From Tubulanus polymorphus (taxonomy: Eukaryota > Animalia > Nemertea), in the NCBI RefSeq assembly GCF_964204645.1, contig NC_134033.1:11664655-11728654 (forward strand): a DNA stretch of 64,000 nt. Reading direction: 5' to 3'. The notes beneath the pieces were generated by a model, which worked only from the letters and a program-made list of their open reading frames with translations, was not told the origin of the DNA and made no database searches. A program made the position numbers and the translations under genes. This document shows, in pieces, positions 15,463 to 60,560 of the stretch. Numbering within the stretch: position 1 is the first letter of the stretch; each line of letters starts with the position of its first letter.

Positions 15463-18011
15463 TTACGCTAAATCGACGTTAAAGGCGTATCGTCGATACT
15501 TGTTTCGTTTTATCAGTCTTGTCGTAAATTCTGTACCAGCCGCAAGATCGTATTGTGTGGCGTATTTACTGTATCTGATATATTCAACCGCCGTGTATCC
15601 TGGTGGTTTCACGTCGAGTGATATATCATAAGTTAAAACACTAGAATTTTCGACCGTTGTGAATATACCCAGGAAATCTCCGCTCTTGACGGCAATGCGC
15701 TGATCAACCGGTACATCAACCTGTTACAATGAGTAAATTCATTTGCAACATAACAAGCTAGAACATATTCTAAGAATATTAACGAAATACATCACCAACT
15801 GACATTAAATTTACAAGCGAAGTCAAACTAATCTAGCTCTTTATCTCTGTTAAGAAACTTACCGAAACGATTCCTGCTTGCGTACCGCTAAGAGTTTGGA
15901 ACCCGATAAGTTTGAAAGTGTGGTTACCGGTCTGTCTGAAGACTGCGCCGTTCACATCATTGCCGTTGCCTCGCGAATAGTAGTTCCAACGAATTATAGA
16001 CGCATTGCACGGCATTTTGTAATCGAGAAGAACTACTAATGAGTTCTTGTGTTTGCTAGTGATGCTCGACATGTTGGTTCCTCCAACCTTTGTATCACAG
16101 GCGGGTGGAGTTACCGGAAGTGGGGTGCTAGTCGGTGCAGGTGGTTGCGCTACCTCTACGCGAAACAAAAAGAAAAAACACAAAGGAAAAATATAATTGT
16201 TGTCAAACATGTTTTAACTTCCATAAATGAAGGTAATATTGAATCTAGGGTGATCGTTTGGAATCAGGAAAGTCGATGTTGATAACTTACCGAAATTGCA
16301 GAGTGGTCCCGAGAATGAACCGGTGCAGGCGCAGTCGGCTTCTCCTAACTCGTTCTTGGAGCAAGTTCCTCCATTCTGACATGGATTCGGATCACACGGG
16401 TCACCGACTGAAATGAGAAATGCAGAACGCCATTATAACTCAGAGACTCGCAATATGCGATTTACGATAAACAATATGCGATTGATGATAAACAATATGC
16501 GATACTTGAGACCCGATATCACTTACCTATTTCACAAAGATCCCCTGAGAAATTAGGAGGGCAGTCACACACAGGTTTACCGTCAACAGAGTAACATTCA
16601 CCACCGTTTGAACAGTTCGTATTGGCGCAAATATCTACAACAAAATATGATTAATGTTAAAAACTGGAGAAATGAACTTGAGATTACAATTGAGGAGATT
16701 TAAATAACGGTTCAACCTACCGCAATCAGCCACAGGGATGCATTTCGACGCGGTGTAAATAAAACCGGCATCGCATTCACATCCGGCAACGGTCGGTAAA
16801 TCACAATTTGCCGCATCGACGGTTCGTTGTTCACATGTTGGTTGACAACCGGACATTTTTCTGTTGAAGGCACTGTTTGCGGGACAATTCGGCACTAAAA
16901 AGAATGATAATAATAATGCCAGAATCAAAAATCAAAAGTGCCACCATTACAGTAATACCGATATCGGATAACCCGATATCGGGGTTCGCACTCAAGACCT
17001 GGTTTTGCCGGAGTTCAACGCTTTAACCACTCGCCCACGTTGCAACCACAGCCACTTACAATGAATTTAGCACTATGAGTGTCCTACAGCGGCGGATCCC
17101 GCACTGCCCCATGAAAATCGTGAGCCCCTGCTACTTATTTCTTAATAGTAATGGCCACACGCATTGTATCTGCAGATGGACACTCATCAACGAAATTGTA
17201 TTTTAAACCCATTTTTGGAATCATATCATAAACCGAAAATTTCTCTTACGGCACAAATCCACCGTTCTCCACGTGGTCACTGTATGTCCAGCCTCTTCGC
17301 ACGCGGTCTCCGCCTCAGAAAGCGACGAACAAATGGTTTCCATATCACCTCTCATCGCCGCTCCGTCAAATACACAGTTGTCGAAAGTCGTGGTAATAGT
17401 GGTATCATTAGCACCGATACATTCACCGAATGGACCGTCAGCTTTATTCAACAGACCGCAGAAATTATCAGCACCGTATTTCGTCTTATCAGCTTCCGTT
17501 AGTACGAATGGCTCACTTGAAACAGACGAAAATATCAACTTCAGATCGGAATTAAAAATGAAAAATAATTTACTTATTGGTTGCATCATCGATATGTTTC
17601 CCTTTGCGTTTCTCATCAATTCATTAACGTTTGTTAATCCCACCGTAATACGTAACTTAAACTCAAACAATAGCAATTAACTAAAACTCACGGCTGTGCT
17701 TCACGCTTACGTCTTCCGGCATAATATGGACAACTATAAAAACAAAAAGATTTCAATTTTGTGGAAACGAAAAACATTTTTACCGGACACACTGTGATAC
17801 GAAGAGTTCCACAACACTAATTAGATGCGTACGTATGTGATATCTATTACGCCACAAAATCAATTCAGTCCAAAACTGGCGAGAGGGACTGAAATTCATT
17901 TAAGTAAGCAAGAGTAAAGACAAAAGAGAGGTATATGTACGTATTGCAGATGGGCTAGGTGCATAGTCACAGAACAATGTGGCTACTAGCTGCTAGCTGA
18001 TAGCTTATGAC

Positions 18012-18084
<73 letters not shown>

Positions 18085-21000
18085 TTTTCAGTTACCTTCC
18101 CGGCACGACGCACTGGTTATCACTACCGAGTAAGCAACTTGACGTCAACGGATCATCGTCGCCGTACACCCCATTACAGTTGCCACAAGCTCCGGTCAAT
18201 CTACCGCCGTAATTATTCGGGCCAAGTATTCCGCCGTACTGTATATACATTCTGTAACCGTAAATGTACTGCACTACGACCCCACAGTTCAACAACTGTA
18301 CGAATAGCCTTCCGTAGCATCGCGTGATCTTTACTCCAGGTACGGTGACGCAGCCGCATTGACGAACTCCGTTTATCTGAAAACGAAAAAGCCTCTTTAT
18401 AGGTAGCCTCGGGAGTGAATGCACAGGAACTTTCAACTGAATGATTACCCGCAGTGTAAGCGTATATACGTCTGACAAATTGCTAATGCTAATAACGTCT
18501 TTCCAAAAGAAGGAAAATACAAATTGCTATTAAATGTCTTTCCAAAAGGCTTAGGCATACTTACATATTGTAAATTGTTCCTGGGTTAATAATGCTACTT
18601 ATAACAAAAAAAATCCGACAAAAAATAATATCCCTTCGATGAAATACACGTAACAGCCCCTCAATCTCCCCACAACCATGACGAAAAACATTCGAGAAAA
18701 AAAGAATTTTACTGTACCCAGAGATATTTGTAATTGAAGGCAATCTGATATCCATTATATTCAACTATTCCATATCTGACGTACGAAACGCGTCCGTATG
18801 GAACGTTTCTGGAAGATATACGATATTTGCAGGTTTCGTCGGCGTAACCGGCGTGCTCCGACAAAATATATTCACAATGATAGCCTTGGAAGTCGAATGG
18901 ACGCAGATCTAACGTTATGTAATGAGGATCGCCATAAACTGAACAGACACTATTGCACGGCCATACGACGGGTACTGAAAAAGGTTAACGATATCTCTTT
19001 ACTCATTTCCTCTGATAATAGAATTCGACTACTTTAACGAAATGAACCTTTATTCATAATTTGAGACGACTGACCTTCACAGTGGGGGCCTTGGAATCCG
19101 GTTGGGCACTGGCACACTGGTTGATTGTTAACCGCTTGACAGGTTGCATTATTTTTGCACGGGTTTGGACTGCACGGGTTTCCTGTAAGCATTGCATTTT
19201 TATAGAATAAGATGCACTGAAGGCTACTGTGGCATGTGTAGCAATCGATATCTCATGTTCAAGTATAGAACAAAATATATGAATATTCGTTTGGGGTAAA
19301 ACGAAATGAAAAGCTTAATTTCGCTTACCGCAAATCGATGAGCAAGTATACGTCGTTCTATCATCAGACGCGGTACAGGTTTCTCCAGACGCACACGGAT
19401 TCGCAAGACAAGGATCCGGAGGTGGCGTCCAAGCGGTGCAAGTACGTGATGAACCATCAGCAGATGCGGTACAGGTTTCTCCAGACGCACACGGATTCGC
19501 AAGACAAGGATCCGGAGGCTGCGTCCAAGCAGTGCAAGTATATGTTGAACCATCAGCAGATGCGGTACAATCGTGTCGATCTGGACACGGTTTCACAGCG
19601 CAAGGATCTGGTGGTTGCGTCACCGCTGTCGATAAAGATTCAAAACTCTTTCAAGAAGAGTTAATGCATTCACGGGAATGACAGTACTATTCACAAAATA
19701 TACACTATGAACCGAGGAAACCAAGCTAGAAAAGTGACATTTTCTAGTTGTCGTCAATCGTAGCCTAGGCCTTTGCACCGTATTCTTATACGCGTCCATC
19801 AAATTATCCATAATGAATCGTTGGGTTTGCGATATTGAATGTAAACAAACACCTACCTTGAGTGCATGTCGTCCCGGTCCATTCACTGGTACACGTGCAT
19901 TCAGGAACTCTCTGGCTATTATTCCACGCGCACGTACCCCCATTTTGACAATAGTTTGAACAATTTCCTGCAAAAATCATTTTCAAATAGCCATCAAAAA
20001 TTATATACTATGCTTGGGTGATTGAAAAGTGATAATTAAACTATTCAAATAGCATCACGGAGGTAGGAAACAAGCGCCGAATTTGTGAAAACTTCGAAAC
20101 GCTCTCTACGACATGGTGCGCCACCTCGCGCCCTTTACACAAACTCCTCACGCTCGGTCCAGAGGAATTTCATCGCTGGCAAGTTTCAAGGTACCTTCAG
20201 ACACCTCTGTCGTATCTATTTGTCAAATATATGTTTAGAAGCGTATCTACCCACATTATCTATCTCCATGAAATATGTTAAGTTATGAAAAGAGCATCGA
20301 TACCCTTGTGTGATTTTGTTTTAGCTGTACATACTGTACTCGCAGAGCGATCCTGTATATCCATAGAAACATTCACAAGCAATTATCTGGCCTTGTATGA
20401 ATTCACATCCATTTTGACAACTTCCTTTGAACGCGCAAATTGGTGGTGACTCTACAAATATATATTTATATATCAGTGGATAATTGATTATTACCAATTT
20501 TGGTTTATCCTCCATCCGACAATTTTTGTTGCGTCATTTTTCTGGCAAATTTATCTCTCAATCTAGTTGTGCATAAATTGCTACTTACCACTTCTTACAC
20601 CTGACACCACAAAACATAAGACAATGAAAGTGTAACCTGAGATGATAAAGAATATAGATATCGTTGAATCTTTAGATGTCTTCGTCATTTCTAGGTGAGC
20701 ATTGCCATGATGGGATTCGAACCTGATTGCACCGGAACTGGATGCGCCGCAATAACGCTGAGGATAGGCAGACCCAATCAAAATTTGTTCATTGGCCATC
20801 AATGAAACGTAAATCTTTATTGTATCTATCGATCATAACACGCTGATACTATATATCTGAATATGACCTAAACCCTCTAAAACAATATGTTTTATCATCA
20901 CAATTATCATTATCTTAATCAGTATGATAATTATCATTTATTACGCATCATTTTGGTCAAACGGACTTTTGCATTCAGAAATAATACATTGTTTCGTATT

Positions 21001-23109: not shown

Positions 23110-23151
23110 TTAGTTGTTCGCCATATTGTCCTTTATCCATTCTACGAATTG
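23110..23151 (-). pseudogene. Minimal remnant of the trypsin-like protease C-terminus
   Basis: Translates as QFVEWIKDNMANN*, matching [13 protein letters not shown] of the remnant at 31342-31575. Flanking sequence near 22700-22950 also resembles 30940-31190. Confidence 0.7.
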
Positions 23152-23734: not shown

Positions 23735-26700
23735 TTACCCTAAATCGACGTTTAAGGCGTATCGTCGATACTTGTTTCGTTTTTTCAGTCTTGTCGTAAA
23801 TTCTGTACCAGTCGCAAGATCGTATTGAGTGGCGTATTTCCCGTATCTGATATATTCGAAGGCCGTGTATCCTGGTGGTTTTTCGCTGCGTGATAGATCG
23901 AAAGTTAAAACTTTCGACCTACGGACTGTTGTGAATATACCCAGGAAATCTCTTTTCTTGACTGCAATGCGCTGATCTACCGGTACATCAACCTGTTACA
24001 ATGAGTAAATTCATTTGCTATGATAAGGTCTATTTCAAACACATCGTGGTCGTGAAGTCACGTATATTACTAATCAGGCTCAATTACTTCATTCAATGAA
24101 TGTCTCAAAACAAGTGAATACACAGACCTATGATAGATATCATCAGTTTATCCCGATCTTAATGATTGGTTCAAAAGACTGCCGTGTCAACGCATATTTA
24201 GTCGGAAGCCGAGCTAAATAGATTGAAATTAACAATAAACAAGCTTACCGAAACGTCTCCTCTTTTCGCGCCGCTCAGAACCTGGAACCCGATAAGTTTG
24301 AAAGTGTGGCTACCAGTTTTTCTGAAAACTGCGCCGTTCACTTCCTTGCCGTTGCCCGTCGAATAGTAGTTCCAACGAATAATGGAGGAATCACACGATA
24401 TTTTGTAATCGAGAAGAACTACTAATGAACCCATGTGTTTCCAACTGCCTTTAGTCATGCTCTTTCCTCCAACTTTTACATTACACGTTGTTGGTGGTGG
24501 TGTCGGTGCAGGTGTCGGTGCAGGTGTTAGTGGTGTGGTCGTTGGCGCTTGTGGTGAGGTCGTTGACGATTGTGGTGTGGTTTCTGACGATTGAGGTGCT
24601 GTCGTTGACGATTGCCGTGTGGTCTCTGACGATAGAGGTGCTGTCGTTGACGATTGAGGTGTGGTCTCTGACGATTGTGGTGTGGTCTCTGACGATTGAG
24701 GTGTGGTCTCTGACGATTGAGGAGTGGTCTCTGACGATTGTGGTGTGGTCTCTGACGATTGTGGTGTGGTCTCTGACGATTGAGGTGTGGTCTCTGACGA
24801 TTGTGGTGTGGTCTCTGACGATTGAGGTGTGGTCTCTGACGATTGAGGAGTGGTCTCTGACGATTGTGGTGTGGTCTCTGACGATTGTGGTGTGGTCTCT
24901 GACGATTGTGGTGTGGTCTCTGACGATTGTGGTGTGGTCGTTGACGATTGGGGTGTGGTAGCCGTTGCATCTATCGCTAAGCCAACGAAAAATACAGAAT
25001 ACAATTCAATTAGTCTGAGTGTGTTGCACTGACGTCACGGCCAGTGGCTAGAGCTGTATTGTATCATTAAATGTACTTCGTTTAGCCGCTTGTGCTTGGT
25101 GTCAAATACGGAAACTGCGTAAACGCTCTACCCATAATAGAAAATAGTCACACGATTGTAGATGACGGGTAGTTTGAATAAGATACAAAATACATGCGTT
25201 TGAAATTCCATGTCCACTACATTCGGTGGTTCAGGTTCAGATTTAGTGAAAATACATGACTTCTCGTGGCCCAGGTTGACTTTCTTACCGAATTTGCAGA
25301 GTGGTCCCGAGAATGAATCAGTGCAGGCGCAGTCGGTTTCTCCTAACTCGTTCTTAGAGCACGTTCCTCCATTCTGACATGGATTCGGGTCACACGGGTC
25401 ACCGACTGAAATGAGAAATGCAGAACGCTATCATAACTCAGAGACTCGCCATATGCGATTTACGATTATTAACATGCGATATTTTAGACCCGATATCACT
25501 TACCTATTTCACAGAGATCCCCTGAGAAATTAGGAGGGCAGTCACACACAGGTTTACCATCAACAGAGTAACATTCACCACCGTTTGAACAGTTCGTATT
25601 GGCGCAAATATCTACAACAAATTGTAAATCACTGCAAGAATTGATTCTTCATGAATTTGATTGGAAATTAGCACAGAGCTGAAATGATAGTGAAATAACG
25701 GTTCAACCTACCGCAATCAGCCACCGGGATGCATCTCGACGCGGTGTAAATAAAACCGGCATCGCATTCACATCCGGCAGAGTTTGGTAAATCACAATTT
25801 GCTGCATCGACGGTTCGTTGTTCACATGTCGGTTGACAACCGGACATTTTTCTGTTAAAGGCACTGTTCTCGGGACAATTCGGTACTAAAACAAAGGTAT
25901 GTCAGCGCTGCTCCATGATTGTGCATTATATACAGTGCTAATTAAAAGGGATTCCAGTTTTCATTTTGGTTTTTAATTTATCTATATAGGCTACATAACA
26001 TAATTTCTCTTACGGCACAAATCCGCCGTTCTCCACGCGGTCACTGTATGTCCAGCCTCTTCGCATTCAGTTTCAGCCTCAGAAAGTGACGAACAAATGG
26101 TTTCCATATCACCTCTCATCGCCGCTCCGTCAAATACACAGTTGTCAAAAGTCGTGGTTACAGTGGTATCATTAGCACCGATACATTCACCGAATGGACC
26201 GTCAGCTTTATTCAACAGACCGCAGAAATTATCAGCACCGTATTTCGTCTTATCGGCTTCCGTTAGTACGAATGGCTCACTTGAAACAGACGAAAATATC
26301 AACTTCATTGGAAAATACATGCGGCAACTTAACAAGATACTAGATCAGAATTATAGTCAATATAAACATGAAATCTAAAACAGCATGTACACGGTACGAA
26401 ATGCAAGATGATCAAATAGAAATTTCCGTTAAATAACCTTCGACAAAATTCACATCAGGCGCGTGGGATTTGAATTATGATCGTAGACGTTGAGTGAATG
26501 TGGTTTCTTTTGCCCCTGATGTATTTTGACGTATTTGTTCTAGTGTTTGTTTATACTTACGCTGGAGCTTGTCGCTTACGTCTTCCGGCCCTCGCTCCGC
26601 AACTGTAACAAGATTCAATAAAATCGATCATTAAACAAAATGATTTACTTCACCTATTCTGGAAATGTTTCTCTGTATCTCAGAAATAATATTGTATACA

Positions 26701-29700
26701 TTTTTGATATCCGAATTTGGCCTCGAGTGACAGAAATCTGGAAAGATCGGTGTAATAGTACTACTAAGCCAGTGTTCAATACGTGAGGCTAATTCTAGGT
26801 GTTCAACTCATCCATTCAAGAACGTAGGTGTTAGGTACGGAAATACGATTAACTTACCTTCCCGGCACGACGCACTGGTTATCAGTGCCACGTAAGCAAC
26901 TCGCCGTCATCGGGTTGTCGTCAGGATAAAGTCCATTACAATTTCCACATAACCCGGTCAATCTACCGCCCAAATTGTTTGAACCTGATCTTCCACCGTA
27001 TCTTACATAGGCTCTGTACCCGCGGTAGAACTGCACTAAAACTCGACACTCCGACAGCAGCACGCTATAGCTTCCATAACATTTCGTGATCTTCATACCC
27101 GGGAGTGTGACGCAGCCGCATTGACGAACTCCGTTTATCTAAATGAAGGAATGACGACGATTAGTAGCCATTATACAAGACCAGATGTACATAGAGGAAA
27201 AAACTAGAAATACTGCAGCAAGTTCTGCAGATGTCACTTAAGATTTGACTCCAAAACATTGGAAAATCGTCAGTTTCTAATTAGAATAAAACCGAGAATT
27301 GAAGGATCGTTATAGCACCTTTACTTGCAATCGAAAAGCAAAATTTCATCAACAGAAAACTATGACTATTTGTTGTAAATTATAGATAGTAATAAAACCT
27401 CAAAAGTTCCTCAAGACCGATTGCAGAATATACATATATATCTTACCCAAAGATATTGGTGATTGAACTGAAGTTTGTATCCGTTGTATTCAACAATCGC
27501 ATATTTGACGTAAGCAATACGATAATACGGAAGGTTGCGGGAAGATATACGATATTTACAGGTTCCGTCAGCGTAACCGGCGTGCTCCGACAAAATATAT
27601 TCACAAGAAGAGCCTTGGAAACTGAATGGACGCCGATCCAACGATTTGTAATGAGGATCGCCGTAAACCGAACAGACACTATTGCACGGTCGTATAATAG
27701 GCACTGAAATAGAAAGACAATATTGTTTCATTTAGATTGGAAAGTGCTTTTAGGTTTATGAAACAATTTGGCTATGAAGTTCCAACATCCAGCCTCGGAA
27801 TAATTAGAGTCCTTAACTATTTATAAGTGAATGTTGATAATCAGCCCTTTCAACTTTTTACTAACCTTCGCAGCGATAGCCTCGAAATCGGGTTGGGCAC
27901 TGGCACACTGGTTGATCATTAACCGCTTGACAGATTCCATCATTTTTGCACGGATTTGGACTGCACGGGTTCACTGTAATTGTGGTGATGTTTAAGGTCA
28001 GTATTTGATAGTTTGATACGTACTACTTGAAGGTGAACATAAAGTTGTGCTTACCACAAATCGATGCGCAGGTACGAGACCTCCTATCAGTGGACACGGT
28101 ACACGTTTGTCGAGGTGGACACGGATTCTTAACGCATGGATCGGGTGGAAGAGTCACTGGTTGCATCACCGCTGTCGAAAGAAAATGTTTTCAAAATTTG
28201 TTCAGGTGGTTTTAGTGCATCCATGTCAAAAATGGAAAGTGCACTATTTACAAATAATGTACATTAGTGAACGACAATTAAGTATTTTCAAAGTAGAAAA
28301 GTGACAGTCTGTTTGTTGCTTACCATTCCGAAACAAGCCCGAACATGATTTAGTCATACACCTACCTTGAGTGCATGTCGTCCCGGTCCATTCAATGGTA
28401 CACGTGCATTCAGGAACTCTCTGCCTATTCCATGCGCACGTACCCCCATTTTGACAATAGTTTAAACAAGTTCCTGCAAACATTATTTAAATAGCCATTT
28501 TTACAATTAATCGTGTTTGGATAATTGAACAGTAATGGTTAAGAAACTTCAAATTGCTTCGCGGAGGTACAAAATAATTTCATGCTTTAGATACTTTAGT
28601 CATATCTATTTGCGTGTTTTTGAAGCATCTATCCACAATATTTTTTGATTCAGGCAATTGCCTCTTCTTTTGGAAAATTTGGTAAAAACATTGATGGCCA
28701 ATGTAATTGCCTACTTAAATCTACATACTGAACTCGCATATCGATCCTGTATAACCAGGAAAACATTCACAAGCAATTTGCTGGCCTCTTATGACTTCAC
28801 ATCCATTTTCACAATTCCCTTTGAACTCGCAAACTCGTGGTTTCACCGCTGTCGAAAGAAAATGTTTACAAAATTTATGCAAGTGGTTTTAGTGCGTCCA
28901 TCGGATAAAGTTAAAAGTGTGTACTATTTACAAGATATACATTAAAGGTGGGTCCGCTAGACTTTTCGAGTCCCATGGCCACAACTTTTCCAAAGGGAAA
29001 TTTCACGCGAGGGAAACAGTACAAATAGTACAAATGAGCAAAAAATGCACTGAATTCATTGTGTGTCAGTGCCTTCGTTGACCAAAATGGCAAACGTGCT
29101 CTCGACGAAAAAGCTAGGCGTTTTCGAAAAAATTAACGACAATTAAACATTTTCAAACTAGAGAGGTGACAATTCTGTTTGTCACTTACCATTCCGCAAC
29201 GAACACGAACGTGATTTACAAAAAATCCAATATTTGTCGTTAGTATGGTGTAGCCAAGGCCTATTCTACCGTAATTCTAATACGAGTCCATCAAATCCCC
29301 GAGAAAAACTTAGGGTTGCAGAGAGTATATGCAGTCAGTAATACACATACCTTGAGTGCATGTCGTCCCAGTCCATTCACTGGTACATGAGCATTCAGGA
29401 ACTCTCTTGTTATTCCATGCGCACGTACCCCCATTTTGACAATAGTTTAAACAAGTTTCTGCAAAAATTATTCAAAAAGCAGATTTAGCAATTAATCATT
29501 GGATAATTGAACAGTAAGGGTTAAGAACATTCAAATAGCGTTGCGGGGGAACAACACAAGTTTATTCTTTAGATACATTAGTCATATCTATTTGCACAAT
29601 ATTTTTTGATTTAGGAAATTCCCTCTTCTTTTGGAATATCTTGTAAAGATCGTTGATGGCCTTTCCTTCTTAACTATACATACTGTACTCGCATATCGAT

Positions 29701-30316
29701 CCTGTATAACCAGGAAAACATTCACAAGCAATTTGCTGGCCTTGTATGACTTCACAACCATTTTCACAATTGCCTTTGAACTTGCAATCTGGAGCTGCTA
29801 CGAAAATACATTTACATATCGTTATCATTTAATGTATCATCCGTTCAACCATTTATCTTATAAAATGTATACTAACCGCTCATTGCGCATGTCACAGCAA
29901 AACACAGAATAATGAAAACGTAACCTGCAATAATAAAGATGTTTTCCAATAAAGCATTGCCGTGCTGGGATCGAAACCTGATTGCATCGAGATGGGACAC
30001 ACGGCTCTAACGGGCACACCCAATCAGATTTTATATTTGAGAAGTTATTTCTAACCGTTTTATCGTGAAATATCATATTCGAATATCCTATGGGATAACT
30101 TGGTGATCGTTCAGTCTGTCATCGGGTTCCAATGTTACAAACAAAATAACCCGATGCGAGAACCGATGATATATTCACATCATTATCTATCCTAGCAAAA
30201 CACTTCGAACTATCTTTTAGTTCGAACTGCAAAGCCATATATTCGATGAAAGAGATTATTCCGAATACGGATTTCTTCGTCGTTCCTGTTACATAACTGA
30301 ACTTACCTAACATCAT
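23735..30316 (-). CDS. Mucin/zonadhesin-like secreted protein, copy B (987 aa; extra EGF pair; 20 PTS heptads, mostly PQSSETT)
   Basis: 17 exons: 30316-30307, 29924-29877, 29797-29684, 29458-29351, 28848-28729, 28473-28366, 28171-28055, 27973-27866, 27703-27447, 27138-26858, 26602-26561, 26279-26014, 25885-25712, 25611-25504, 25405-25289, 24976-24249, 23992-23735. Phases match copy A. A minus-strand AATAAA at 23418-23423 is conserved downstream of copies C, D and E. Confidence 0.9.
24520..24960 (-). repeat. Coding 21-bp tandem repeat (PQSSETT) in the PTS exon of copy B
   Basis: Plus-strand unit TGTGGTGTGGTCTCTGACGAT, about 20 copies. Confidence 0.95.
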
Positions 30317-42423: not shown

Positions 42424-42608
42424 AGGGCTTAATTTCCCTACCGAGGTAGGTGCCCGAGGAGAGGGCTTAATTGTCCTACCGCTAAGTAGGTACCCAAGGA
42501 GAGGGCTTAATTTCCCTATCGATAGGTAGGTGCCCAAGGAGAGGGCTTAATTGTCCTACTGCTCGGTAGGTGCCCAAAGAAGGGGCTTAATTGTCCTACC
42601 GTTCGGTA
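42424..42608. repeat. ~40-bp minisatellite, about 4.7 copies
   Basis: Unit AGGGCTTAATT(T/G)(C/T)CCTACCGnnnGGTAGGT(G/A)CCCAAGGAG starting at about 42424, 42462, 42502, 42542 and 42582. Confidence 0.9.
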
Positions 42609-47100: not shown

Positions 47101-49941
47101 TCCCGGCACGACGCACTGGTTATCGATGCCAAGTAAGCAAGTCGCCGTCGCAGGATTGTCGTCAGCATAATTTCCATTACAATTTCCACATAACCCGGTC
47201 AATCTACCGCCGAAATTGTTTGGACCTGATCTTCCACCGTATCTTACATAGAGTCTGTACCCGTAGACGTATTGCACTAAGACTCCACAGTTTAACAACT
47301 GCACGCTATAGCTTCTATAACATTTCGTGATCTTTATTCCCGGGAGTGTGACGCAGCCGCATTGACGAACTCCGTTTATCTAAATGATGGAATGATTATA
47401 TTACACCAGACTAGATGTACATTGAGAAAATTAAACTGGAAATACTGCAGCAAGTCTTTTAGTTGTCACGTAAATTTTAAGATTTGACTCTAAAACACTG
47501 GCAATTTGTCGATTTCTACTTTGAATAAAACCAAGAAAGAATTGAAGGATTGTTTAAGCTATTTTACTTGCAATCAAAAAGAAGCAAACTTTCATCAACA
47601 GATTTACATAAGACCGATTGTAGAATATATATCTTACCCACAGATATTGGTGATTGAACTCAAGTCTGTATCCGTTGTATTCAACAATCGCATATTTGAC
47701 GTAAGCCACGCGATAATACGGAAGGTTCCGAGAAGATATACGATATTTGCAGGTTCCGTCTGCGTAACCGGCGTGCTCCGACAAAATGTATGCACAAGAA
47801 GAGCCTTGGAAGTTGAATGGACGCCGATCCAACGATTTGTAATGAGGATCGCCGTAAACCGAACAGACACTATTGCACGGTCGTATAATAGGCACTGAAA
47901 TAGGAATATTGTTTCATTTAGATTAGAAAGTGCTTTTAGGTTTATGAAACAATTTGACTGGGTATCAAAGTTCCTTCCTCCAGCCTCGGAATAAGTAGAG
48001 TCCTTATTCATTTAGAAGTGAATAGTAGATAATCAGCCTTTTTAACTATTTAACTAACCTTCACAGCGGGCGCCTTGGAATCCGGTTAAACACTGGCACA
48101 CTGGTTGATTGTTAACCACTTGACAGATTGCATTGTTTTTGCACGGATTTGGACTGCACGGGTTCGCTGTAATTGTGGTGATGTTTAAGGTCAGTATTTG
48201 ATAGTTTGATACGCGCTACTTGAAGGTGAACATAAAGTTGTACTTACCACAAATCGACGCGCAGGTACGAGACCTCCTATCAGTGGACACGGTACACTTT
48301 TGTCCAGGTGGACACGGATTCTTAACACATGGATCTGGTGGAAGAGTCACTGGTTGCATCGCCGCTGTCGAAAGAAAATGTTTTCGAAATTTGTTCAGGT
48401 GGTTTTAGTGCATCCATGGGATAAAATGGAAAGTGCACTATTTACAAAATATACATTAAAGTGAACGACAATTAAGTATCTTCAAAGTAGAAAAGTGACA
48501 ATTTTGTTTGTCACTTATCATTCCACAACGAACACTACGTGATTTACAAAAAAATCTAAATCTGTCGTTACTATGACGTAGTCAAGAAAAGGGAAATAGT
48601 CCATCGAACGGTGGACAATCGTATTTGCGCGATGTGAGACTGAGGACCGCGCGCTGGTCCCATCTATCACTTAACCTTAACGTGCGCGAGCGGCTGTTCA
48701 GGTAGCCAATCGGATACCTTGCGCCTTTGTCTGTTTCTCTCTACAGTTCTGCATCACAATAAGTAGACGTGTTTGAACATCCGTTCTTGCAAAAATCCGT
48801 TATAGTCGTCGCATTTTACTCCGTTAGCTGACGAAATAAGGACCGCAATGTAGTCTTCGACTTGCTGGCATTTATAACAACATGAACCGTGATATTATGT
48901 GCGCGCAGGCTCCTTTGTCAATTAACATAGGCTCGTTAATATGGCGTAACCAAGAAAAACTTCAGGTTTCTAATATGCAAATCGAACACCTACCTTGAGT
49001 GCATTTCGTCCCGGTCCATTCACTGGTACATGTGCATTCAGGAACTCTCTGGCTATTCCATGCGCACGTACCCCCATTTTGACAATAGTCTAAACAAGTT
49101 CCTACAAGAATAATTCAAATAGCCATTTTTACAATTAATCATGTTTGGATAATGGAACAGTAACGGATAAGACAAATCAAATAGCTCCGCGGAGGTATGA
49201 AACAAGTTTATGATTTAAATGTCATATCTATTTGTGTTTTCTTGAAGCATCTATCAATATATTTTGCTTCAAGAAATTGCCTCTTCTTTTGGAAAATTTG
49301 GTAAAATTATTGATTGCCAACGAAATTAAGAATTTCCTTCTTCAATAAAACATACTGTACTCGCAGAGGGATCCTGTGTAACCAGGAAAACATTCACAAG
49401 CGATTTGCTGGCCTTTTATGACTTCACATCCATTCTTACAACTCCCTTTGAAGTCGCAAATTGGTGATGCTACAAAATATAGATTTACATATCAGTGCAT
49501 AGCTATATATCAATCACTAAATTCAACCATTTATCTTTTGTTATTGTCTGGCAAAATTCGATTGTGTATAAAATGTATACTAACCGCTCTTTGTGCCTGT
49601 CACAGCAAAGCACAGAACAATGAAAACGTAACCTGCAATAATAAAGATGTTTTTCAATAAGGCATTGCCGTGCTGGGATCCAAACCTAATTGCATCGAGA
49701 TACGCGGCTCTAAAAGGCTGGCTTTTATGTCGATAAGCGACGGGACGCCTACCGACTCCTACCGACGCAACTGAGAGCAACCGCGATCGCAGCCCAGCTT
49801 ATGTCGACTGCGCTCCGATTCCCAGTAGCTGAGGCCGACTAGCGGGATACGAGATCCTCCCAGTTGCTTCCCTGCTCATGTCGGTTACGGTTACTGGCAA
49901 ATGCACCGGCTCATATGGTCACGTTACTTACCTAACATCAT
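44136..49941 (-). CDS. Mucin/zonadhesin-like secreted protein, copy D (784 aa; 2 PTS heptads)
   Basis: 15 exons: 49941-49932, 49632-49585, 49469-49356, 49101-48994, 48364-48248, 48166-48059, 47894-47638, 47379-47099, 46972-46931, 46648-46383, 45981-45808, 45721-45614, 45445-45329, 44995-44646, 44390-44136; 2355 nt. Confidence 0.9.
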
Positions 49942-52145: not shown

Positions 52146-52390
52146 GGATAGGATAGGATAGGAAATTTCTATAGCGCCTTGTAAATAGCAGGGCTTTTAT
52201 CAAAGGCGCTCTCCAGACGAAGATGATGACTTGAACAGAAATGTCTTGAGCTGTGCTTTGAATGCTGGTAGAGAGTCAATATCACGGAGAGGTTGCGGAA
52301 GGGAGTTCCACACTATAGGTGCAGATGTCTCAAATGCACGTCCGCCGAATGACTTAAGACGACATGATCTGACTAACAGAAGGTTCTGCG
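52146..52390 (-). mobile_element. 3' end of an L2/CR1-type LINE with (TCCTA)n tail
   Basis: LRNGSQNLLLVRSCRLKSFGGRAFETSAPIVWNSLPQPLRDIDSLPAFKAQLKTFLF, followed on the minus strand by GCGCTATAGAAAT and a short CCTAT microsatellite tail. Confidence 0.85.
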
Positions 52391-54623: not shown

Positions 54624-57600
54624 TTACTCTAAGTCGACGTTTAAGGCGTATCGTCGATACTTGCGTGTCTTAGTTTTTGTCTTAAATTCTGTACCAGCCA
54701 CAAGATCGTATTGAGTGGCGTAATTTTTGTATCTGATATATTCGTAAGTCGTGAATCCTGGTGGTTTCACGTCGACTGATAGATCACAAGTTAAAACCTT
54801 CGAATTATTGACTGTTGTGAATATACCCAAGAAATCACCTTTCTTGACTGCAATGCGCTGATCTACCGGTACATCAACCTGTTAAAATGAGTAGATATAT
54901 GTGCTAAGATAAGGTCTATTTCAAACACATCGTGATCGTGAAGTCACGCATATTACTAATCAGGCTCAATTACTTCATTCACTGGATGTCTTTAAACCAA
55001 GTAAATACATAGACCTATATGATAGATATCATCAGTATATCCCGATTTTAATGATTGGTTCAAAAAACTGTCGTGTCAACGCATATTTAGGTGAAATGGA
55101 TTAGAATTAAAAAGAAAAAAACAAAATTACCGAAACGTTTCCTGTTTTCGCGCCGCTCAGAACCTGGAACCCGATAAGTTTGAAAGTGTGGCTACCGGTT
55201 TTTCTGAAAACTGCGCCATTCACATCCCTGCCGTTGCCGGTCGAATAGTAGTTCCAACGAATAATGGAGGAATCACACGGTATTTTGTAATCGAGAAGAA
55301 CTACTAATGAGTTCACGTGTTTCCAACTGCCTCTAGTCATGTTCTTTCCTCCAACTTTTACATTACACGTTGATGGTGGTGGTGTCGGTGCAGGTGTCGG
55401 TGCAGGTGTTGGTGGTGTGGTCGGTGACGATTTCGGTGTCGTAGCAGTTGCATCTATCCCTAAGCCAACGAAAAATACAGAATATAATTCAATTAGTCTG
55501 AGTGTGTTGCACTGACGTCACGGCCAGTGGCTAGAGCTGTATTGTATCATTAAATGTACTTCGTTTATCAGCTAATGCTTGTTGTCAAATACGGATAATG
55601 CGTAAAGCTCTACCCATAATAGACAATAGTCACACGATTGTAGATGACGGGTAGTTTGAATTAGATATCAAAATACATAAAGTGACTCATAATTCTATAT
55701 TAGGGCTGGGTACCAAACCTTTATATTCTGTCTATTTTCATGTCACTATAATAAATGAAAAATAAAAAATACATGCGTTTTAAATTCCCCACCCACCACT
55801 CTCTATAGTTAAGAAAAGATTTAGCAAAAATACATGACTTTGAAGGAAAAATCTCGTGGGCCAACGATGACTTTTATTTACCGAATTTGCAGAGTGGTCC
55901 GGCGAATGAATTGGTGCAGGCGCAATTTGCTTCTCCTAACTCGTTCTTGGAGCACGTTCCTCCATTCTGACATGGATTCGGGTCACACGGGTCACCGACT
56001 GAAATGAGAAATGCAGAACGCCATTTAAACTCAGAGACTCGCAATATGCGATTTACTATTAACAACATGCGATAAACAATATGCGATTTACGATTAACGA
56101 TATGCGATAAACAATATGCGTTTTACGATTAACAATATGCGATAAACAATATGCGATTTACGATTAACAATATGCGATATTTGAGACCCGACATCACTTA
56201 CCTATTTCACAGAGATCCCCTGAGAAATTAGGAGGGCAGTCACACACAGGTTTACCGTCAACAGAGTAACATTCACCACCGTTTGAACAGTTCGTATTGG
56301 TGCAAATATCTACAACAAAATGTGATTAATGTTAACAACTGGAGAAATGAACTTGAGATTACAATTGAGGAGATTTAAATAACGGTTCAACCTACCGCAA
56401 TCAGCAACCGGGATGCATCTCGACGCGGTGTAAATAAAACCGGCATCGCATTCACATCCGGCAGAGTTTGGTAAATCACAATTTGCCGCATCGACGGTTC
56501 GTTGTTTACATGTTGGTTGACAACCGGACATTTTTCTGTTAAAAGCACTGTTTGCGGGACAATTCGGCACTAAAATAAAATATATCAGCGCTACTATAAC
56601 ATTATACACGATTAAGTCTCTATGTTTCTTGTCTTTTAGTGGTTTTTATCTCTTTTGTTTTTTTAAAATTAATTCTATATGAGCTAAATGCCATTATGTA
56701 GTCTATGCCGGTATGTTCTGAGTTTAAAACAAATTTGTATTCAGATTCACGGGAGTATCGCGATTATATCGTGTATCTTTGAACACGTCGAGTGTAAATA
56801 ATGTTAAAGACGTTTCTATAGATTTGAAAATCGTGATTCAGCGGACCTACAAAGTGTACGGCATACTCTGCGTGACAGGCACATCAGACGGAACAATTTC
56901 TGGTATTAATGAATTCATGCAATCTTTCTTTCTATATCAGAAAACCTTTCTTCCATCGCTTAGTTATTTCTATTATCTATACATCACATAATTTCTCTTA
57001 CGGCACAAATTTGCCGTTCTCCACGTGGTCACTGTATGTCCAGCCTCTTCGCACGCGGTCTCTGCCTCAGAAAGCGACGAACAAATGGTTTCCATATCAC
57101 CTCTCATCGCAGCTCCGTCAAATACACAGTTGTCGAAAGTCGTGGTTATAGTGGTATCATTAGCACCGATACATTCACCGAATGGACCGTCAGCTTTATT
57201 CAACAGACCGCAGAAATTATCAGCACCGTATTTCGTCTTATCGGCTTCCGTTACTACGAATGGCTCACTTGAAACAGACGAAAATATCAACTTCAATCGA
57301 AAATATATGCGGCAACTTTACAAGATACTAGATCAGAATTAGTCGATACAAACGTGAAATCTAAGACAGTATGTACAAGGTGCGAAATGCAAGATGATCA
57401 AATAGAAATTTCCGTTAAGTAACCTGCGGCAAAATTCACATCCTAGGCGCGTGGGATTTGAATAATGATCGTAGACGTTGAGTGAACGTGGTTTCTTTTG
57501 CCCCTGATGTATTTTAACGTATTTGTTCTAGTTTTCGTTTGATACTTACGCTGGAGCTTGTCGCTTACGTCTTCCGGCCCTCGCAACACAGCTGTAAAAA

Positions 57601-60560
57601 GATCCAATATTTCAAAGAAACCGAGTATGGAACTTACTGATTTACTTCACCTAATCTGGAATCTACTGATTCTCTATTTCTCGGAAATGACATTGTATAC
57701 ATTTTTCATAAACCTACCTTCCCGGTACGACGCACTGGTTATCGATGCCAAGTAAGCAAGTCGCCGTCGCAGGATTGTCGTCAGCATAATTTCCATTACA
57801 ATTTCCACATAACCCGGTCAATCGACCGCCGAAATTGTTTGGACCTGATCTTCCACCGTATCTTACATAGAGTCTGTACCCGTAGACGTATTGCACTAAG
57901 ACTCCACAGTTTAACAACTGCACGCTATAGCTTCTATAACATTTCGTGATCTTTATTCCCGGGAGTGTGACGCAGCCGCATTGACGAACTCCGTTTATCT
58001 AAATGATGGAATTATTATATTACACCAGACTAGATGTACATTGAGAAAATTAAACTGGAAATACTGCAGCAAGTCTTTTAGTTGTCACGTAAATTTTAAG
58101 ATTTGACTCTAAAACACTGACAATTTGTCGATTTCTACTTTGAATAAAACCAAGAAAGAATTGAAGGATTGTTTGAGCTATTTTACTTGCAATCAAAAAG
58201 AAGCAAACTTTCATCAACAGATTTACATAAGACCGATTGCAGAATATATATCTTACCCACAGATATTGGTGATTGAACTCAAGTCTGTATCCGTTGTATT
58301 CAACAATCGCATATTTGACGTAAGCCACGCGATAATACGGAAGGTTCCGAGAAGATACACGATATTTGCAGGTTCCGTCTGCGTAACCGGCGTGCTCCGA
58401 CAAAATGTATGCACAAGAAGAGCCTTGGAAGTTGAATGGACGCCGATCCAACGATTTGTAATGAGGATCGCCGTAAACCGAACAGACACTATTGCACGGT
58501 CGTATAATAGGCACTGAAATAGGAATATTGTTTCATTTAGATTAGAAAGTGCTTTTAGGTTTATGAAACAATTTGACTGGGTATCAAAGTTCCTACCTCC
58601 AGCCTCGGAATAAGTAGAGTCCTTATTTATTTAGAAGTGAATAGTAGATAATCAGCCTTTTTAACTATTTAACTAACCTTCACAGCGGGCGCCTTGGAAT
58701 CCGGTTAAACACTGGCACACTGGTTGATTGTTGACCACTTGACAGATTGCATTGTTTTTGCACGGATTTGGACTGCACGGGTTCGCTGTAATTGTGGTGA
58801 TGTTTAAGATCAGTATTTGATAGTTTGATACGCGCTACTTGAAGGTGAACATAAAGTTGTACTTACCACAAATCGACGCGCAGGTACGAGACCTCCTATC
58901 AGTGGACACGGTACACTTTTGTCCAGGTGGACACGGATTCTTAACACATGGATCTGGTGGAACAGTCACTGGTTGCATCACCGCTGTCGAAAGAAAATGT
59001 TTTCGAAATTTGTTCAGGTGGTTTTAGTGCATCCATGGGATAAAATGGAAAGTGCACTATTTACAAAATATACATTAAAGTGAACGACAATTAAGTATCT
59101 TCAAAGTAGAAAAGTGACAATTTTGTTTGTCACTTATCATTCCACAACGAACACTACGTGATTTACAAAAAAATCTAAATCTGTCGTTACTATGACGTAG
59201 TCAAGAAAAGGGAAATAGTCCATCGAACGGTGGACAATCGTATTTGCGCGATGTGAGACTGAGGACCGCGCGCTGGTCCCATCTATCACTTAACCTTAAC
59301 GTGCGCGAGCGGCTGTTCAGGTAGCCGATCGGATACCTTGCGCCTTTGTCTGTTTCTCTCTACAGTTCTGCATCACATTAAGTAGACGTGTTTGAACATC
59401 CGTTCTTGCAAAAATCCATTATAGTCGTCGCATTTTACTCTGTTAGCCGACGAAATAAGGACCGCAATGTAGTCTTCGACTTGCTGTCATTTATAACAAC
59501 ATGAACCGTGATATTATGTGCGCACAGGCTCCTTTGTCTATTAACGTAGGCTCGTTAATATGGCGTAACCAAGAAAAACTTCAGGTTTCCAATATGCCAA
59601 TCGAGCACCTACCTTGAGTGCATGTCGTCCCGGTCCATTCACTGGTACATGTGCATTCAGGAACTCTCTGGCTATTCCATGCGCACGTACCCCCATTTTG
59701 ACAATAGTCTAAACAAGTTCCTACAAGAATAATTCAAATAGCCATTTTTACAATTAATCATGTTTGGATAATGGAACAGTAACGGATGAGACAATTCAAA
59801 TAGCTCCGCGGAGGTACGAAACAAGTTTATGATTTAAATGTCATATCTATTTGCGTTTTCTTGAAGCATCTATCAATATATTTTGCTTCAAGAAATTGCC
59901 TCTTCTTTTGGAAAATTTGGTAAAATCATTGATTGCCAACGAAATTAAGAATTTCCTTCTTCAATAAAACATACTGTACTCGCAAAGGGATCCTGTGTAA
60001 CCAGGAAAACATTCACAAGCGATTTGCTGGCCTTTTATGACTTCACATCCATTCTTACAACTCCCTTTGAAGTCGCAAATTGGTGATGCTACAAAATATA
60101 GATTTACATATCAGTGCATAGCTATATATCAATCACTAAATTCAACCATTTATCTTTTGTTATTGTCTGGCAAAATTCGATTGTGTATAAAATGTATACT
60201 AACCGCTCTTTGTGCCTGTCACAGCAAAGCACAGAACAATGAAAACGTAACCTGCAATAATAAAGATGTTTTTCAATAAGGCATTGCCGTGCTGGGATCC
60301 AAACCTAATTGCATCGAGATACGCGGCTCTAAAAGGCTGGCTTTTATGTCGATAAGCGACGGGACGCCTACCGACTCCTACCGACGCAACTGAGAGCAAC
60401 CGCGATCGCAGCCCAGCTTTTGTCGACTGCGCTCCGATTCCCAGTAGCTGAGGCCGACTAGCGGGATACGAGATCCTTCCAGTTGCTTCCCTGCTCATGT
60501 CGGTTACGGTTACTGGCAAATGTACCGGCTCAGATGGTCACGTTACTTACCTAACATCAT
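54624..60560 (-). CDS. Mucin/zonadhesin-like secreted protein, copy E (777 aa; 1 PTS heptad)
   Basis: 15 exons: 60560-60551, 60251-60204, 60088-59975, 59720-59613, 58983-58867, 58785-58678, 58513-58257, 57998-57718, 57591-57550, 57267-57002, 56569-56396, 56309-56202, 55998-55882, 55459-55131, 54878-54624; 2334 nt. Confidence 0.9.
56041..56178. repeat. Intronic minisatellite AACAATATGCGAT(TTACGATT) between the two post-TIL EGF exons; copy number varies among paralogs
   Basis: Longest in E; shorter at 45490-45590 (D) and 16451-16503 (A); about two units in B and C. Confidence 0.85.

What the first reader, a model, noticed from the sequence alone, without database searches (positions are those of the whole stretch)
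15463..60560. Tandem family of five modular secreted VWD-C8-TIL mini-mucins: a candidate tunable glue, mucus or tube-building system
Seen: five co-oriented genes with conserved exon lengths and phases, encoding SP-EGFn-VWD(GDPH)-RRKR-C8-TIL-EGF2-PTS-basic C-terminal domain. The core is held constant while PTS length, PTS chemistry, EGF number and the C-terminal tip vary. Established: VWD-C8-TIL assemblies drive polymerisation in gel-forming mucins and VWF, and VWD/C8/EGF combinations occur in invertebrate adhesives such as sea star Sfp1. Gel-forming mucins have several D assemblies, usually with a C-terminal cystine knot; these genes have one assembly and a different terminal domain. Inference: a lineage-specific toolkit of secreted material proteins whose mix sets gel or adhesive properties. 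I cannot confirm novelty without a search.
Basis: partly seen in the sequence, partly recalled or inferred. Interest (0 to 1): 0.85.

Follow-up and report, generated by a model that had tools for sequence, protein, structure and literature searches.

The report
Ribbon-worm tandem mucin-like gene family
A ribbon worm (Tubulanus polymorphus) carries a head-to-tail array of seven intact genes (five in this window) for secreted, cysteine-rich mucin/glue-type proteins that end in an unnamed lectin-like domain; the genes are real and public annotation almost misses them, but their role in mucus, tube or adhesive is still only inferred.

Summary
On the minus strand lie five co-oriented paralogous genes. 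Two more lie just beyond the window end, so the genome has seven. Each has 12-17 coding exons with conserved lengths and phases. Every junction is GT-AG and no model has an internal stop. The architecture is signal peptide, 2-6 EGF-type modules, one VWD-C8-TIL assembly with GDPH, a 42-nt microexon encoding RRKR, two EGF, a variable PTS stretch (17-631 aa; 21-bp repeat in 0-87 copies), and a basic 165-aa C-terminal domain.

New points:
- The organism is Tubulanus polymorphus.
- RefSeq has only 155-aa tail models for genes 1 and 2. They match my splice of the last two exons exactly.
- The C-terminal domain has no Pfam family, yet about 1,400 relatives exist in marine invertebrates. One is a sea-star protein with an Sfp1-type domain set. 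The domain folds as a lectin/CBM-like beta jelly roll.
- dN/dS is 0.26 in the core and 0.60 in the tail, with signs of gene conversion.

Only genes 2 and 3 are truly mucin-like. I rate it a new variant of the known VWD-C8-TIL mucin/cohesive-protein kind, of moderate interest.

The parts
15463..20688 (-). Gene 1 (842 aa): signal peptide, EGF, EGF, triplicated 5-Cys module, EGF, VWD-RRKR-C8-TIL, 2 EGF, 17-aa Pro/Thr linker, domain X
   Evidence: Exons: 20589-20688, 20335-20451, 19857-19967, 19329-19625, 19075-19182, 18718-18974, 18096-18376, 17692-17733, 17250-17515, 16721-16894, 16527-16634, 16291-16407, 15863-16155, 15466-15720, plus stop 15463-15465. All junctions are GT-AG with no internal stop. 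RefSeq 155-aa model P0170 equals residues 688-842.
23735..30316 (-). Gene 2 (987 aa): as gene 5 plus a second EGF exon pair; Glu-rich 162-aa PTS
   Evidence: Exons: 30307-30316, 29877-29924, 29684-29797, 29351-29458, 28729-28848, 28366-28473, 28055-28171, 27866-27973, 27447-27703, 26858-27138, 26561-26602, 26014-26279, 25712-25885, 25504-25611, 25289-25405, 24249-24976, 23738-23992, plus stop. RefSeq model P0003 (XP_074657933.1) equals residues 833-987.
33319..41146 (-). Gene 3 (1456 aa): extra EGF pair and a 631-aa PTS. It is the only copy of true mucin size.
   Evidence: Exons: 41137-41146, 40680-40727, 40474-40587, 40147-40254, 39509-39628, 39195-39302, 38894-39010, 38705-38812, 38284-38540, 37695-37975, 37531-37572, 36986-37251, 36675-36848, 36467-36574, 36252-36368, 33797-35934, 33322-33573, plus stop.
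44136..49941 (-). Gene 4 (784 aa), 35-aa PTS
   Evidence: Exons: 49932-49941, 49585-49632, 49356-49469, 48994-49101, 48248-48364, 48059-48166, 47638-47894, 47099-47379, 46931-46972, 46383-46648, 45808-45981, 45614-45721, 45329-45445, 44646-44995, 44139-44390, plus stop. A block of about 8.2 kb covering most of this unit and its upstream spacer is 96.7% identical to the gene 5 unit.
54624..60560 (-). Gene 5 (777 aa), 28-aa PTS; used as the reference copy
   Evidence: Exons: E0 60551-60560 (ATG plus 7 nt, donor gtaagt), E1 60204-60251, E2 59975-60088, E3 59613-59720, E4 58867-58983, E5 58678-58785, E6 58257-58513, E7 57718-57998, E8 57550-57591, E9 57002-57267, E10 56396-56569, E11 56202-56309, E12 55882-55998, E13 55131-55459, E14 54627-54878, plus stop.
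57718..58513 (-). VWD domain of gene 5 (exons E6 and E7) with the GDPH motif near its start
   Evidence: Pfam PF00094 on each exon (E about 2e-5 each). GDPH is at residue 183.
57550..57591 (-). 42-nt microexon E8 encoding the RRKR dibasic (furin-type) site between VWD and C8. Equivalents: 17692-17733, 26561-26602, 37531-37572, 46931-46972.
   Evidence: Conserved with AG and GT in all seven genes. The flanking introns are both phase 2, so skipping the exon would keep the frame.
56396..57267 (-). C8 (E9) and TIL (E10) exons of gene 5
   Evidence: Pfam C8 1.9e-13 and TIL 2.2e-8 on the gene 3 equivalents. dN/dS is 0.27 and 0.15.
34078..35917 (-). PTS array of gene 3: 21-bp (7-aa, Thr/Pro/Gln/Ser) repeat, 87.5 copies
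   Evidence: TRF and translation. The same repeat has 20.5 copies in gene 2 (24530-24959) and 2.3 in gene 4. No such array is found in genes 1 and 5.
33322..34039 (-). C-terminal domain X of gene 3, split over the end of E13 (33797-34039) and E14 (33322-33573) by a phase-0 intron
   Evidence: Alignment with single-exon copies of the domain (A1). No Pfam family. About 1,400 relatives. Beta jelly-roll models with pLDDT 79 and 84.

Best explanation
This is a young tandem array in the ribbon worm Tubulanus polymorphus: seven genes, five of them in the window. All are intact and under purifying selection, and they encode secreted, cysteine-rich modular glycoproteins.

Shown:
- Each protein has a short signal peptide and 2-6 EGF-type modules.
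- One VWD-C8-TIL D assembly follows, most like those of FCGBP and gel-forming mucins. It has a GDPH motif, and an RRKR site sits on its own microexon.
- Then come two EGF modules, a PTS stretch whose length is set by a 21-bp repeat, and a basic C-terminal beta-sandwich (domain X).
- There is no membrane anchor.

Inferred mechanism:
- In the secretory pathway the protein is cut at Asp-Pro of GDPH and by a furin-type convertase after RRKR. The pieces stay disulfide-linked, as in FCGBP and sea-star Sfp proteins.
- The PTS is O-glycosylated.
- Outside the cell the D assembly and EGF modules provide protein-protein cohesion.
- The basic, lectin/CBM-like domain X binds glycans or polyanions, possibly the O-glycans of sister proteins.
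- The paralogue mix would then act as cross-linkers and spacers of epidermal or gland mucus, tube lining or adhesive. Short-PTS copies would cross-link and long-PTS copies would hydrate.
For: Gene models: all junctions are GT-AG, phases and lengths are conserved, and no model has a stop, in seven copies. Two RefSeq models reproduce my last splice exactly.

Domains. The best solved relatives are FCGBP (1.6e-79), MUC5B, MUC5AC, VWF and MUC2.

Secretion: the only hydrophobic segment is N-terminal.

Selection: dN/dS is 0.26 in the core, 0.15-0.16 in TIL/EGF2 and 0.60 in X.

PTS repeat number varies among the paralogues.

Domain X:
- It has no Pfam family.
- It has about 1,400 relatives, among them a Patiria protein with an Sfp1-type domain set, mollusc astacin-ApeC-CUB-kringle-lectin proteins and hemichordate polycystin-1-like proteins.
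- The fold neighbours are the Cwp84 lectin-like domain (Z 10.4 and 8.1), CBM-like domains of carbohydrate esterases, F-type lectins and CBMs.
- The nearest named Atlas cluster is PF18560 Lectin_like.
- Its pI is 9.3-10.1.

Precedents:
- GDPH cleavage with disulfide-held fragments (PMC8267560, PMC10880436).
- VWD-C8-TIL, EGF and lectin domains in cohesive proteins of temporary adhesives (PMC9382459, PMC6410801).
Against:
- RefSeq has no full-length model of 290-1302 aa for these genes. That could mean weak transcript support or merely difficult repeats.
- Five of the seven copies have only 17-35 aa of PTS, so they are not mucins in the usual sense.
- One D assembly and no cystine knot gives no known route to linear polymers.
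- The fold matches for X are in the Z 8-10 range, where only a shared arrangement may be meant. No sugar-binding residues were identified.
- GDPH and RRKR cleavage are predicted from motifs only.
Confidence: 0.6

Rival explanations
1. They are mucosal defence or recognition factors rather than structural material. In this reading they are FCGBP-like soluble proteins whose lectin-like domain X binds microbial or prey glycans. The fast-evolving tail and copy-number expansion would reflect a host-microbe arms race.
For: - FCGBP is the best solved relative.
- X is the fastest-evolving part, dN/dS 0.60 against 0.26.
- X occurs beside C-type lectin, ApeC and sushi domains in other phyla.
- The array is recently expanded with gene conversion.
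Against: - dN/dS stays below 1, and no site-level test was run.
- The PTS repeat and EGF variation fit a material role as well.
- No binding data exist.
- FCGBP has many D assemblies, not one.
Confidence: 0.2
2. They are components of an apical extracellular matrix, egg coat or gamete-adhesion layer, like alpha-tectorin or zonadhesin. RefSeq names the chromosome-7 paralogue in this way.
For: - The paralogue P0026 is named 'alpha-tectorin-like'.
- D assemblies with EGF occur in zonadhesin and tectorin (general knowledge).
Against: - No NIDO, ZP or MAM domain and no membrane or GPI signal appears in any exon.
- The name is an automatic best-hit label.
Confidence: 0.1
3. Most copies are silent or decaying duplicates, and only one or two are used.
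For: - RefSeq gives only 155-aa tail models for genes 1 and 2, and I found no models of 85-1302 aa for the others.
- Genes 4, 5 and 6 are very young copies.
Against: - All seven have complete ORFs of 702-1456 aa, every splice site is intact, and dN/dS is well below 1 even between old pairs.
- Models longer than 1302 aa, such as fused tandem models, were outside the searched length ranges.
Confidence: 0.07

Closest known systems
FCGBP (IgGFc-binding protein) and gel-forming mucins MUC2/MUC5AC/MUC5B
   Same: The VWD-C8-TIL D assembly is their closest solved relative. It has a GDPH motif at the start of VWD, as in 11 of FCGBP's 13 VWD domains (PMC10880436). Genes 2 and 3 have a PTS stretch. The products are secreted and cysteine-rich.
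   Different: There is one D assembly instead of 4-13. There is no D1-D2-D'D3 N-terminus and no cystine knot. EGF modules flank the D assembly. An RRKR microexon lies inside it. The C-terminus is the unnamed domain X.
Cohesive proteins of temporary adhesives: sea-star Sfp1/Sfp2, flatworm Mlig-ap1, limpet P-vulgata_3 (PMC9382459, PMC6410801)
   Same: They combine VWD-C8-TIL with EGF and a carbohydrate-binding module, have high Cys content, and are predicted to be cleaved into disulfide-linked subunits. Domain X itself occurs five times in a Patiria miniata protein whose domain set is that of Sfp1: F5/8C, SUEL lectin, VWD, C8, TIL, EGF.
   Different: Those proteins are 3,000-5,400 aa with discoidin, SUEL or C-type lectin and Lys/Arg-rich regions. 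These are 700-1,450 aa, have a PTS, and come as a seven-gene array. I did not test sequence orthology to Asterias Sfp1.
T. polymorphus 'alpha-tectorin-like' XP_074653932.1 (P0026) and a second paralogue on contig 7
   Same: They share the same genome and the VWD-C8-TIL core directly followed by domain X. Identity is 37% over the core.
   Different: P0026 has no EGF pair or PTS between TIL and X, and it is a single dispersed gene. In the second paralogue (L008) X is one exon.
Pfam PF18560 Lectin_like (Cwp84 lectin-like domain) and CBM-type jelly rolls
   Same: The predicted fold of X superposes on 4ci7 (Z 10.4 and 8.1; 129-144 residues) and on CBM-like domains. PF18560 is the nearest named Atlas cluster.
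   Different: There is no sequence match to any Pfam family. The Z values are borderline, and ligand binding is untested.

Membership tests
VWD-C8-TIL 'D assembly' proteins (Pfam PF00094, PF08742, PF01826) | VWD, C8 and TIL domains in that order | tested here: met
   Exon-wise Pfam hits all exceed the curated cut-offs. The order is fixed by the gene model. The profile hits FCGBP, mucins and VWF in the PDB.
Gel-forming mucins (MUC2 type) | N-terminal D1-D2-D'D3 array of several D assemblies | tested here: not met
   Each gene has only one VWD, one C8 and one TIL.
Gel-forming mucins (MUC2 type) | Long central PTS domain | tested here: inconclusive
   The PTS is 162 aa in gene 2 and 631 aa in gene 3, but only 17-35 aa in the other five copies.
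Gel-forming mucins (MUC2 type) | C-terminal cystine-knot dimerisation domain | tested here: not met
   The C-terminus is domain X, with 2-3 Cys and no Pfam match.
FCGBP | Many tandem VWD-C8-TIL repeats, most with GDPH | tested here: not met
   GDPH is present once, but there is a single D assembly.
Alpha-tectorin / zonadhesin | NIDO or MAM domains, several D assemblies, ZP domain or membrane/GPI anchor | tested here: not met
   No such Pfam hits appear on any exon. No C-terminal hydrophobic segment exists. The joined protein was not scanned as a whole.
Sea-star Sfp1-type cohesive protein | Discoidin (FA58C) and galactose-binding lectin domains with VWD/C8/EGF in a protein of more than 3,000 aa | tested here: not met
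   There is no FA58C or SUEL in the exons. The proteins are 702-1456 aa. The shared elements are VWD, C8, TIL, EGF and domain X.
Domain X family (unnamed; defined here by alignments A1 and A2) | A beta-sandwich of about 160 aa with conserved Cys-x-Gly, Trp, (V/I)(W/F)R, (L/I)(I/V)G and GD-x-x-G positions | tested here: met
   Both exon halves align in register to single-exon copies. The profile finds 1,400 proteins at E<=1e-3 and 279 at E<=1e-10. The nearly invariant columns are listed in A2.
Methyltransf_FA / 'FAMeT' domain (PF12248), reported in sea-star Sfps | Sequence match to PF12248 | tested here: not met
   No Pfam hit at E<=1 to 10. hhalign of A1 against the genome's only PF12248 domain gives probability 0.4%.
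Lectin_like PF18560 / carbohydrate-binding modules | Sequence membership and a demonstrated sugar site | tested here: inconclusive
   There is fold similarity only (Z 8-10) and an Atlas feature score of 0.89. There is no sequence match, and ligand binding is not testable here.

The most novel reading that the evidence does not exclude
Domain X is a new, widespread family of extracellular glycan- or polyanion-binding modules in marine invertebrates. It occurs in nemerteans, molluscs, echinoderms including a sea-star protein with an Sfp1-type domain set, and hemichordates. In Tubulanus it caps a self-cross-linking set of mucin-like proteins: the X tail of one molecule binds the O-glycans on the PTS of its sister paralogues. 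Copy choice, PTS repeat number and optional inclusion of the RRKR microexon would then tune the stiffness or stickiness of the worm's mucus or tube.
Probability: 0.2. Interest if true: 0.7.

Novelty: new variant of a known kind. Interest (0 to 1): 0.45.

Why it matters
Ribbon worms are known for copious mucus, yet its structural proteins are essentially undescribed. This array gives seven concrete, complete gene models that public annotation reduces to two 155-aa fragments.

It also defines an unnamed extracellular domain with more than a thousand relatives. That domain recurs in a sea-star protein with an Sfp1-type domain set and in large mollusc and hemichordate surface proteins. It is therefore a candidate missing 'binding module' in marine bioadhesives and mucus.

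The family is a compact natural series: the core stays the same while spacer length and tail differ. That makes it suitable for testing how D assemblies, PTS length and a lectin-like cap set material properties. If expression proves weak or non-secretory, it is just another lineage-specific VWD gene expansion.

Tried and rejected
- Full-length annotated proteins: three word-index searches found none for these genes, only the 155-aa tail models. The searches were the C-terminal half-domain within the 744-aa ORF, a profile of P0026 plus exon pieces and P0003. Lengths above 1302 aa were never covered.
- The look-up of encoding contigs for P0003 returned no record.
- FAMeT idea: rejected.
For the second it gave one, a plant cysteine oxidase at TM 0.17, which is meaningless. 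Only the exhaustive aligner gave usable neighbours.
- Gene 5's long upstream ATG (98-aa extension) was rejected in favour of the conserved 10-nt first coding exon with a gtaagt donor.
- Several alternative splice sites were rejected because they broke phase or were not conserved. Examples are the C8 acceptor six bases into the open frame and TIL donors at +12 and +33 nt.
I redid the step from coordinates only.
Exons were searched one by one by reference. Joining was done only inside scripts from the session's files, to check frames, compute dN/dS and compare with fetched proteins. A whole-protein domain scan and a fold of the full-length model were therefore left out.


Full report
WHAT IS THERE. 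The window is G000:C9:11,664,655-11,728,654 of a 267.8-Mb assembly. The organism is Tubulanus polymorphus, a palaeonemertean ribbon worm. Two RefSeq proteins that match my models exactly (P0003 = XP_074657933.1 and P0170) lie on a contig of 16,481,795 bases. That is the length of contig C9. Earlier scan notes had suggested the species, and this confirms it independently.

Self-comparison shows five tandem units of about 10.6 kb between 15.4 and 61.6 kb. A block of about 8.2 kb covering most of unit 4 and its upstream spacer is 96.7% identical to unit 5, and that block runs to the window's end. Genome searches with the C8 exon and with both halves of the C-terminal domain find seven close copies in a row. 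Two of them lie beyond the window at C9:11.729-11.745 Mb. I fetched these as L006 and L007.

GENE MODELS. All genes are on the minus strand. Gene 1 has diverged in its introns, so translated comparison of gene 1 with the others picks out the exons cleanly. I then aligned each exon with 70-nt flanks across all copies. I kept only AG and GT sites that were conserved and consistent in phase. The result is the same layout in all seven genes:
- E0: 10 coding nt, ATG plus 7 nt, donor gtaagt. It is found in genes 2-7.
- E1: the rest of the signal peptide.
- E2-E5: cysteine modules of 108-117 nt, all phase 1-1.
- E6 (257 nt) and E7 (281 nt): VWD.
- E8: 42 nt.
- E9 (266 nt): C8.
- E10 (174 nt): TIL.
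- E11 (108 nt) and E12 (117 nt): EGF.
- E13: PTS plus the first half of the C-terminal domain.
- E14 (252-255 nt): the second half, followed by TAA.

Every junction is GT-AG and no model has an internal stop. The proteins are 842, 987, 1456, 784, 777, 741 and 702 aa. The files saved lacked the last residue, and one search shows this.

The RefSeq 155-aa models P0170 and P0003 are identical to residues 688-842 of gene 1 and 833-987 of gene 2. They therefore reproduce my E13/E14 junction.

DOMAINS. Searched exon by exon by reference, Pfam gives:
- VWD on E6 and E7.
- C8 at 1.9e-13.
- TIL at 2.2e-8.
- EGF on E3, E5, E11 and E12 above the cut-off. E2 falls just below it (19.9 bits against a cut-off of 21.5).
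- Nothing for the 5-Cys E4 module.

A profile of the paralogue P0026 plus the exon pieces hits FCGBP best (1.6e-79), then MUC5B, MUC5AC, VWF and MUC2. Each protein has one GDPH at the start of VWD and one RRKR, encoded by the microexon E8. The only hydrophobic segment is the N-terminal signal peptide.

- Genes 2 and 3 carry a second E2/E3 pair.
- Gene 1 has its E4 module tripled by a 96-bp repeat, and it has its own ATG in E1.
- Gene 6 lacks E5, and gene 7 lacks E3 and E4.
- The PTS is a 21-bp (7-aa) repeat with 87.5 copies in gene 3, 20.5 in gene 2 and 2.3 in gene 4. No such array is seen in genes 1 and 5. This gives 17-631 aa, and gene 2's PTS is Glu-rich.

Only genes 2 and 3 deserve the word mucin.

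THE C-TERMINAL DOMAIN (X). It spans about 165 aa, has pI 9.3-10.1, and is split by a phase-0 intron. It has no Pfam family, even at lenient thresholds. The same domain occurs as a single exon at more than 20 other places in this genome, and the two exon halves align to those copies in register.

A profile search of 1.84 billion representative proteins finds 1,400 relatives at E<=1e-3 and 279 at E<=1e-10. The ones I looked up are:
- mollusc astacin-ApeC-CUB-kringle-C-lectin-sushi proteins with X at the C-terminus (Haliotis, Babylonia, Mactra);
- hemichordate proteins, including polycystin-1-like proteins with X near the N-terminus;
- a Lineus protein and an Amphiura protein;
- a 3,207-aa Patiria miniata protein with F5/8C, SUEL-lectin, VWD, C8, TIL and EGF domains. 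That is the domain set described for the sea-star adhesive Sfp1. It carries five X stretches (PMC9382459).

Within T. polymorphus, two dispersed paralogues on contig 7 also have VWD-C8-TIL followed by X. One is RefSeq 'alpha-tectorin-like' P0026.

AlphaFold models give an all-beta jelly roll. The paralogue's X scores pLDDT 79 and pTM 0.79. Gene 2's own X, taken from P0003 with a 61-row alignment, scores pLDDT 84 and pTM 0.81. Exhaustive structural comparison gives the following neighbours:
- a cyanophage capsid protein (Z 10.8 and 8.3);
- the lectin-like domain of Clostridioides Cwp84 (Z 10.4 and 8.1);
- a mycobacteriophage tail-tip protein;
- the N-terminal polymer- or carbohydrate-binding domains of esterases (Z 6-8.5);

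The Atlas searches point the same way, to PF18560 Lectin_like. These Z values are at the level where only a common arrangement may be meant. 'Lectin/CBM-like' is therefore a fold statement and a functional lead, not a finding. I tested and rejected a link to the FAMeT (PF12248) domain reported in sea-star footprint proteins.

SELECTION AND ARRAY DYNAMICS. Pooled pairwise dN/dS values are:
- VWD: 0.26
- C8: 0.27
- TIL: 0.15
- EGF pair: 0.16
- whole core: 0.26
- domain X: 0.60

The copies are therefore constrained, and the tail is the least constrained folded part. Synonymous distances are mosaic. Gene 1 differs from the rest by dS of about 0.74 in VWD but only 0.07-0.22 in C8-TIL-EGF. Genes 4 and 5 are nearly identical in VWD, while genes 5 and 6 are nearly identical in X. 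This indicates gene conversion or unequal crossing-over inside the array.

HOW IT LIKELY WORKS. Shown: these are secreted, anchorless, Cys-rich modular proteins with one D assembly, GDPH, RRKR, a variable PTS and a basic beta-sandwich tail.

Inferred from known families:
- Asp-Pro autocleavage at GDPH, with fragments held by disulfides, as in FCGBP, where cleavage stabilises the VWD domain (PMC8267560, PMC10880436).
- Convertase cleavage after RRKR.
- O-glycosylation of the PTS.
- Cohesion through D-assembly and EGF contacts, as proposed for Sfp1/Sfp2, flatworm Mlig-ap1 and a limpet protein (PMC9382459, PMC6410801).
- Binding of glycans or polyanions by X.

A mix of short cross-linkers (genes 1 and 4-7) and long hydrated spacers (genes 2 and 3) would make a tunable gel or glue. 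From general knowledge, ribbon worms secrete abundant epidermal mucus and tubulanids often line burrows or tubes with it. No tool result ties these genes to that.

LIMITS. No RNA evidence could be obtained. The three word-index searches cover lengths of 85-1302 aa and found no full-length annotation. Longer, fused models cannot be excluded. Exons were searched separately by reference, and joining was confined to scripts for frame checks, dN/dS and local comparison. A whole-protein domain scan and a full-length fold were left out.

VERDICT. It is a new variant of the known VWD-C8-TIL mucin/cohesive-protein kind. The more general by-product is an unnamed, widespread, lectin-like extracellular domain.

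Noticed in passing
window 9233-9709 (-): This ORF has a Gly/Asn/Ser/Ala repeat followed by two ShK domains (Pfam PF01549, E 3e-14). It is a separate secreted cysteine-rich gene just upstream of the array.
   Followed up: partly
window 33797-35934 (gene 3, exon E13), second acceptor near 35091: The PTS exon contains an internal duplicate of its own 5' end, including about 100 nt of former intron and the acceptor site. It is read through in frame as a 33-aa non-PTS linker. This could give two alternative acceptors and two PTS lengths.
   Followed up: partly
window 17692-17733, 26561-26602, 37531-37572, 46931-46972, 57550-57591: The 42-nt RRKR microexon lies between two phase-2 introns, so skipping it keeps the reading frame. 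The dibasic cleavage site could be an optional cassette. No transcript data were available to test this.
   Followed up: partly
window 15463-20688 against the other units: Synonymous divergence is mosaic. Gene 1's VWD has dS of about 0.74, while its C8-TIL-EGF part has 0.07-0.22. Genes 4 and 5 are closest in VWD, and genes 5 and 6 are closest in the tail. This indicates gene conversion or unequal crossing-over within the array.
   Followed up: yes
window 15466-16087 and 23738-24464 (coding tails of genes 1 and 2): RefSeq annotates these loci only as 155-aa 'uncharacterized proteins' (LOC141911349 and LOC141910944). Each starts at an internal Met and holds just the C-terminal domain. The upstream 690-830 residues are missing from the public models I could reach.
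   Followed up: yes
L008 (C7:553000-562500, +) and L005 (C7:7945000-7954999, -): These are two dispersed paralogues with VWD-C8-TIL followed by domain X. In L008, X is a single exon. L005 is RefSeq 'alpha-tectorin-like' XP_074653932.1, with no PTS.
   Followed up: partly
C6:2.92-2.94 Mb, C9:15.66-15.68 Mb, C3:7.377-7.382 Mb (L002-L004, L009-L015): These are local clusters of single-exon domain-X copies, 190-290-aa open frames in tandem. They suggest further expanded gene families built on this unnamed domain.
   Followed up: no
window 42719-43027 (-), 52203-52484 (-), 42424-42608: These intergenic ORFs look like retroelement remnants, and there is a 40-bp tandem repeat between units 3/4 and 4/5. 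Pfam gives no hit.
   Followed up: partly
window 11786-12341 and 18007-18084: A tandem repeat at 11.8-12.3 kb reads open in several frames (self-matches offset by 100 bp). An (ATG)26 microsatellite sits in the intron between exons E7 and E8 of gene 1.
   Followed up: no
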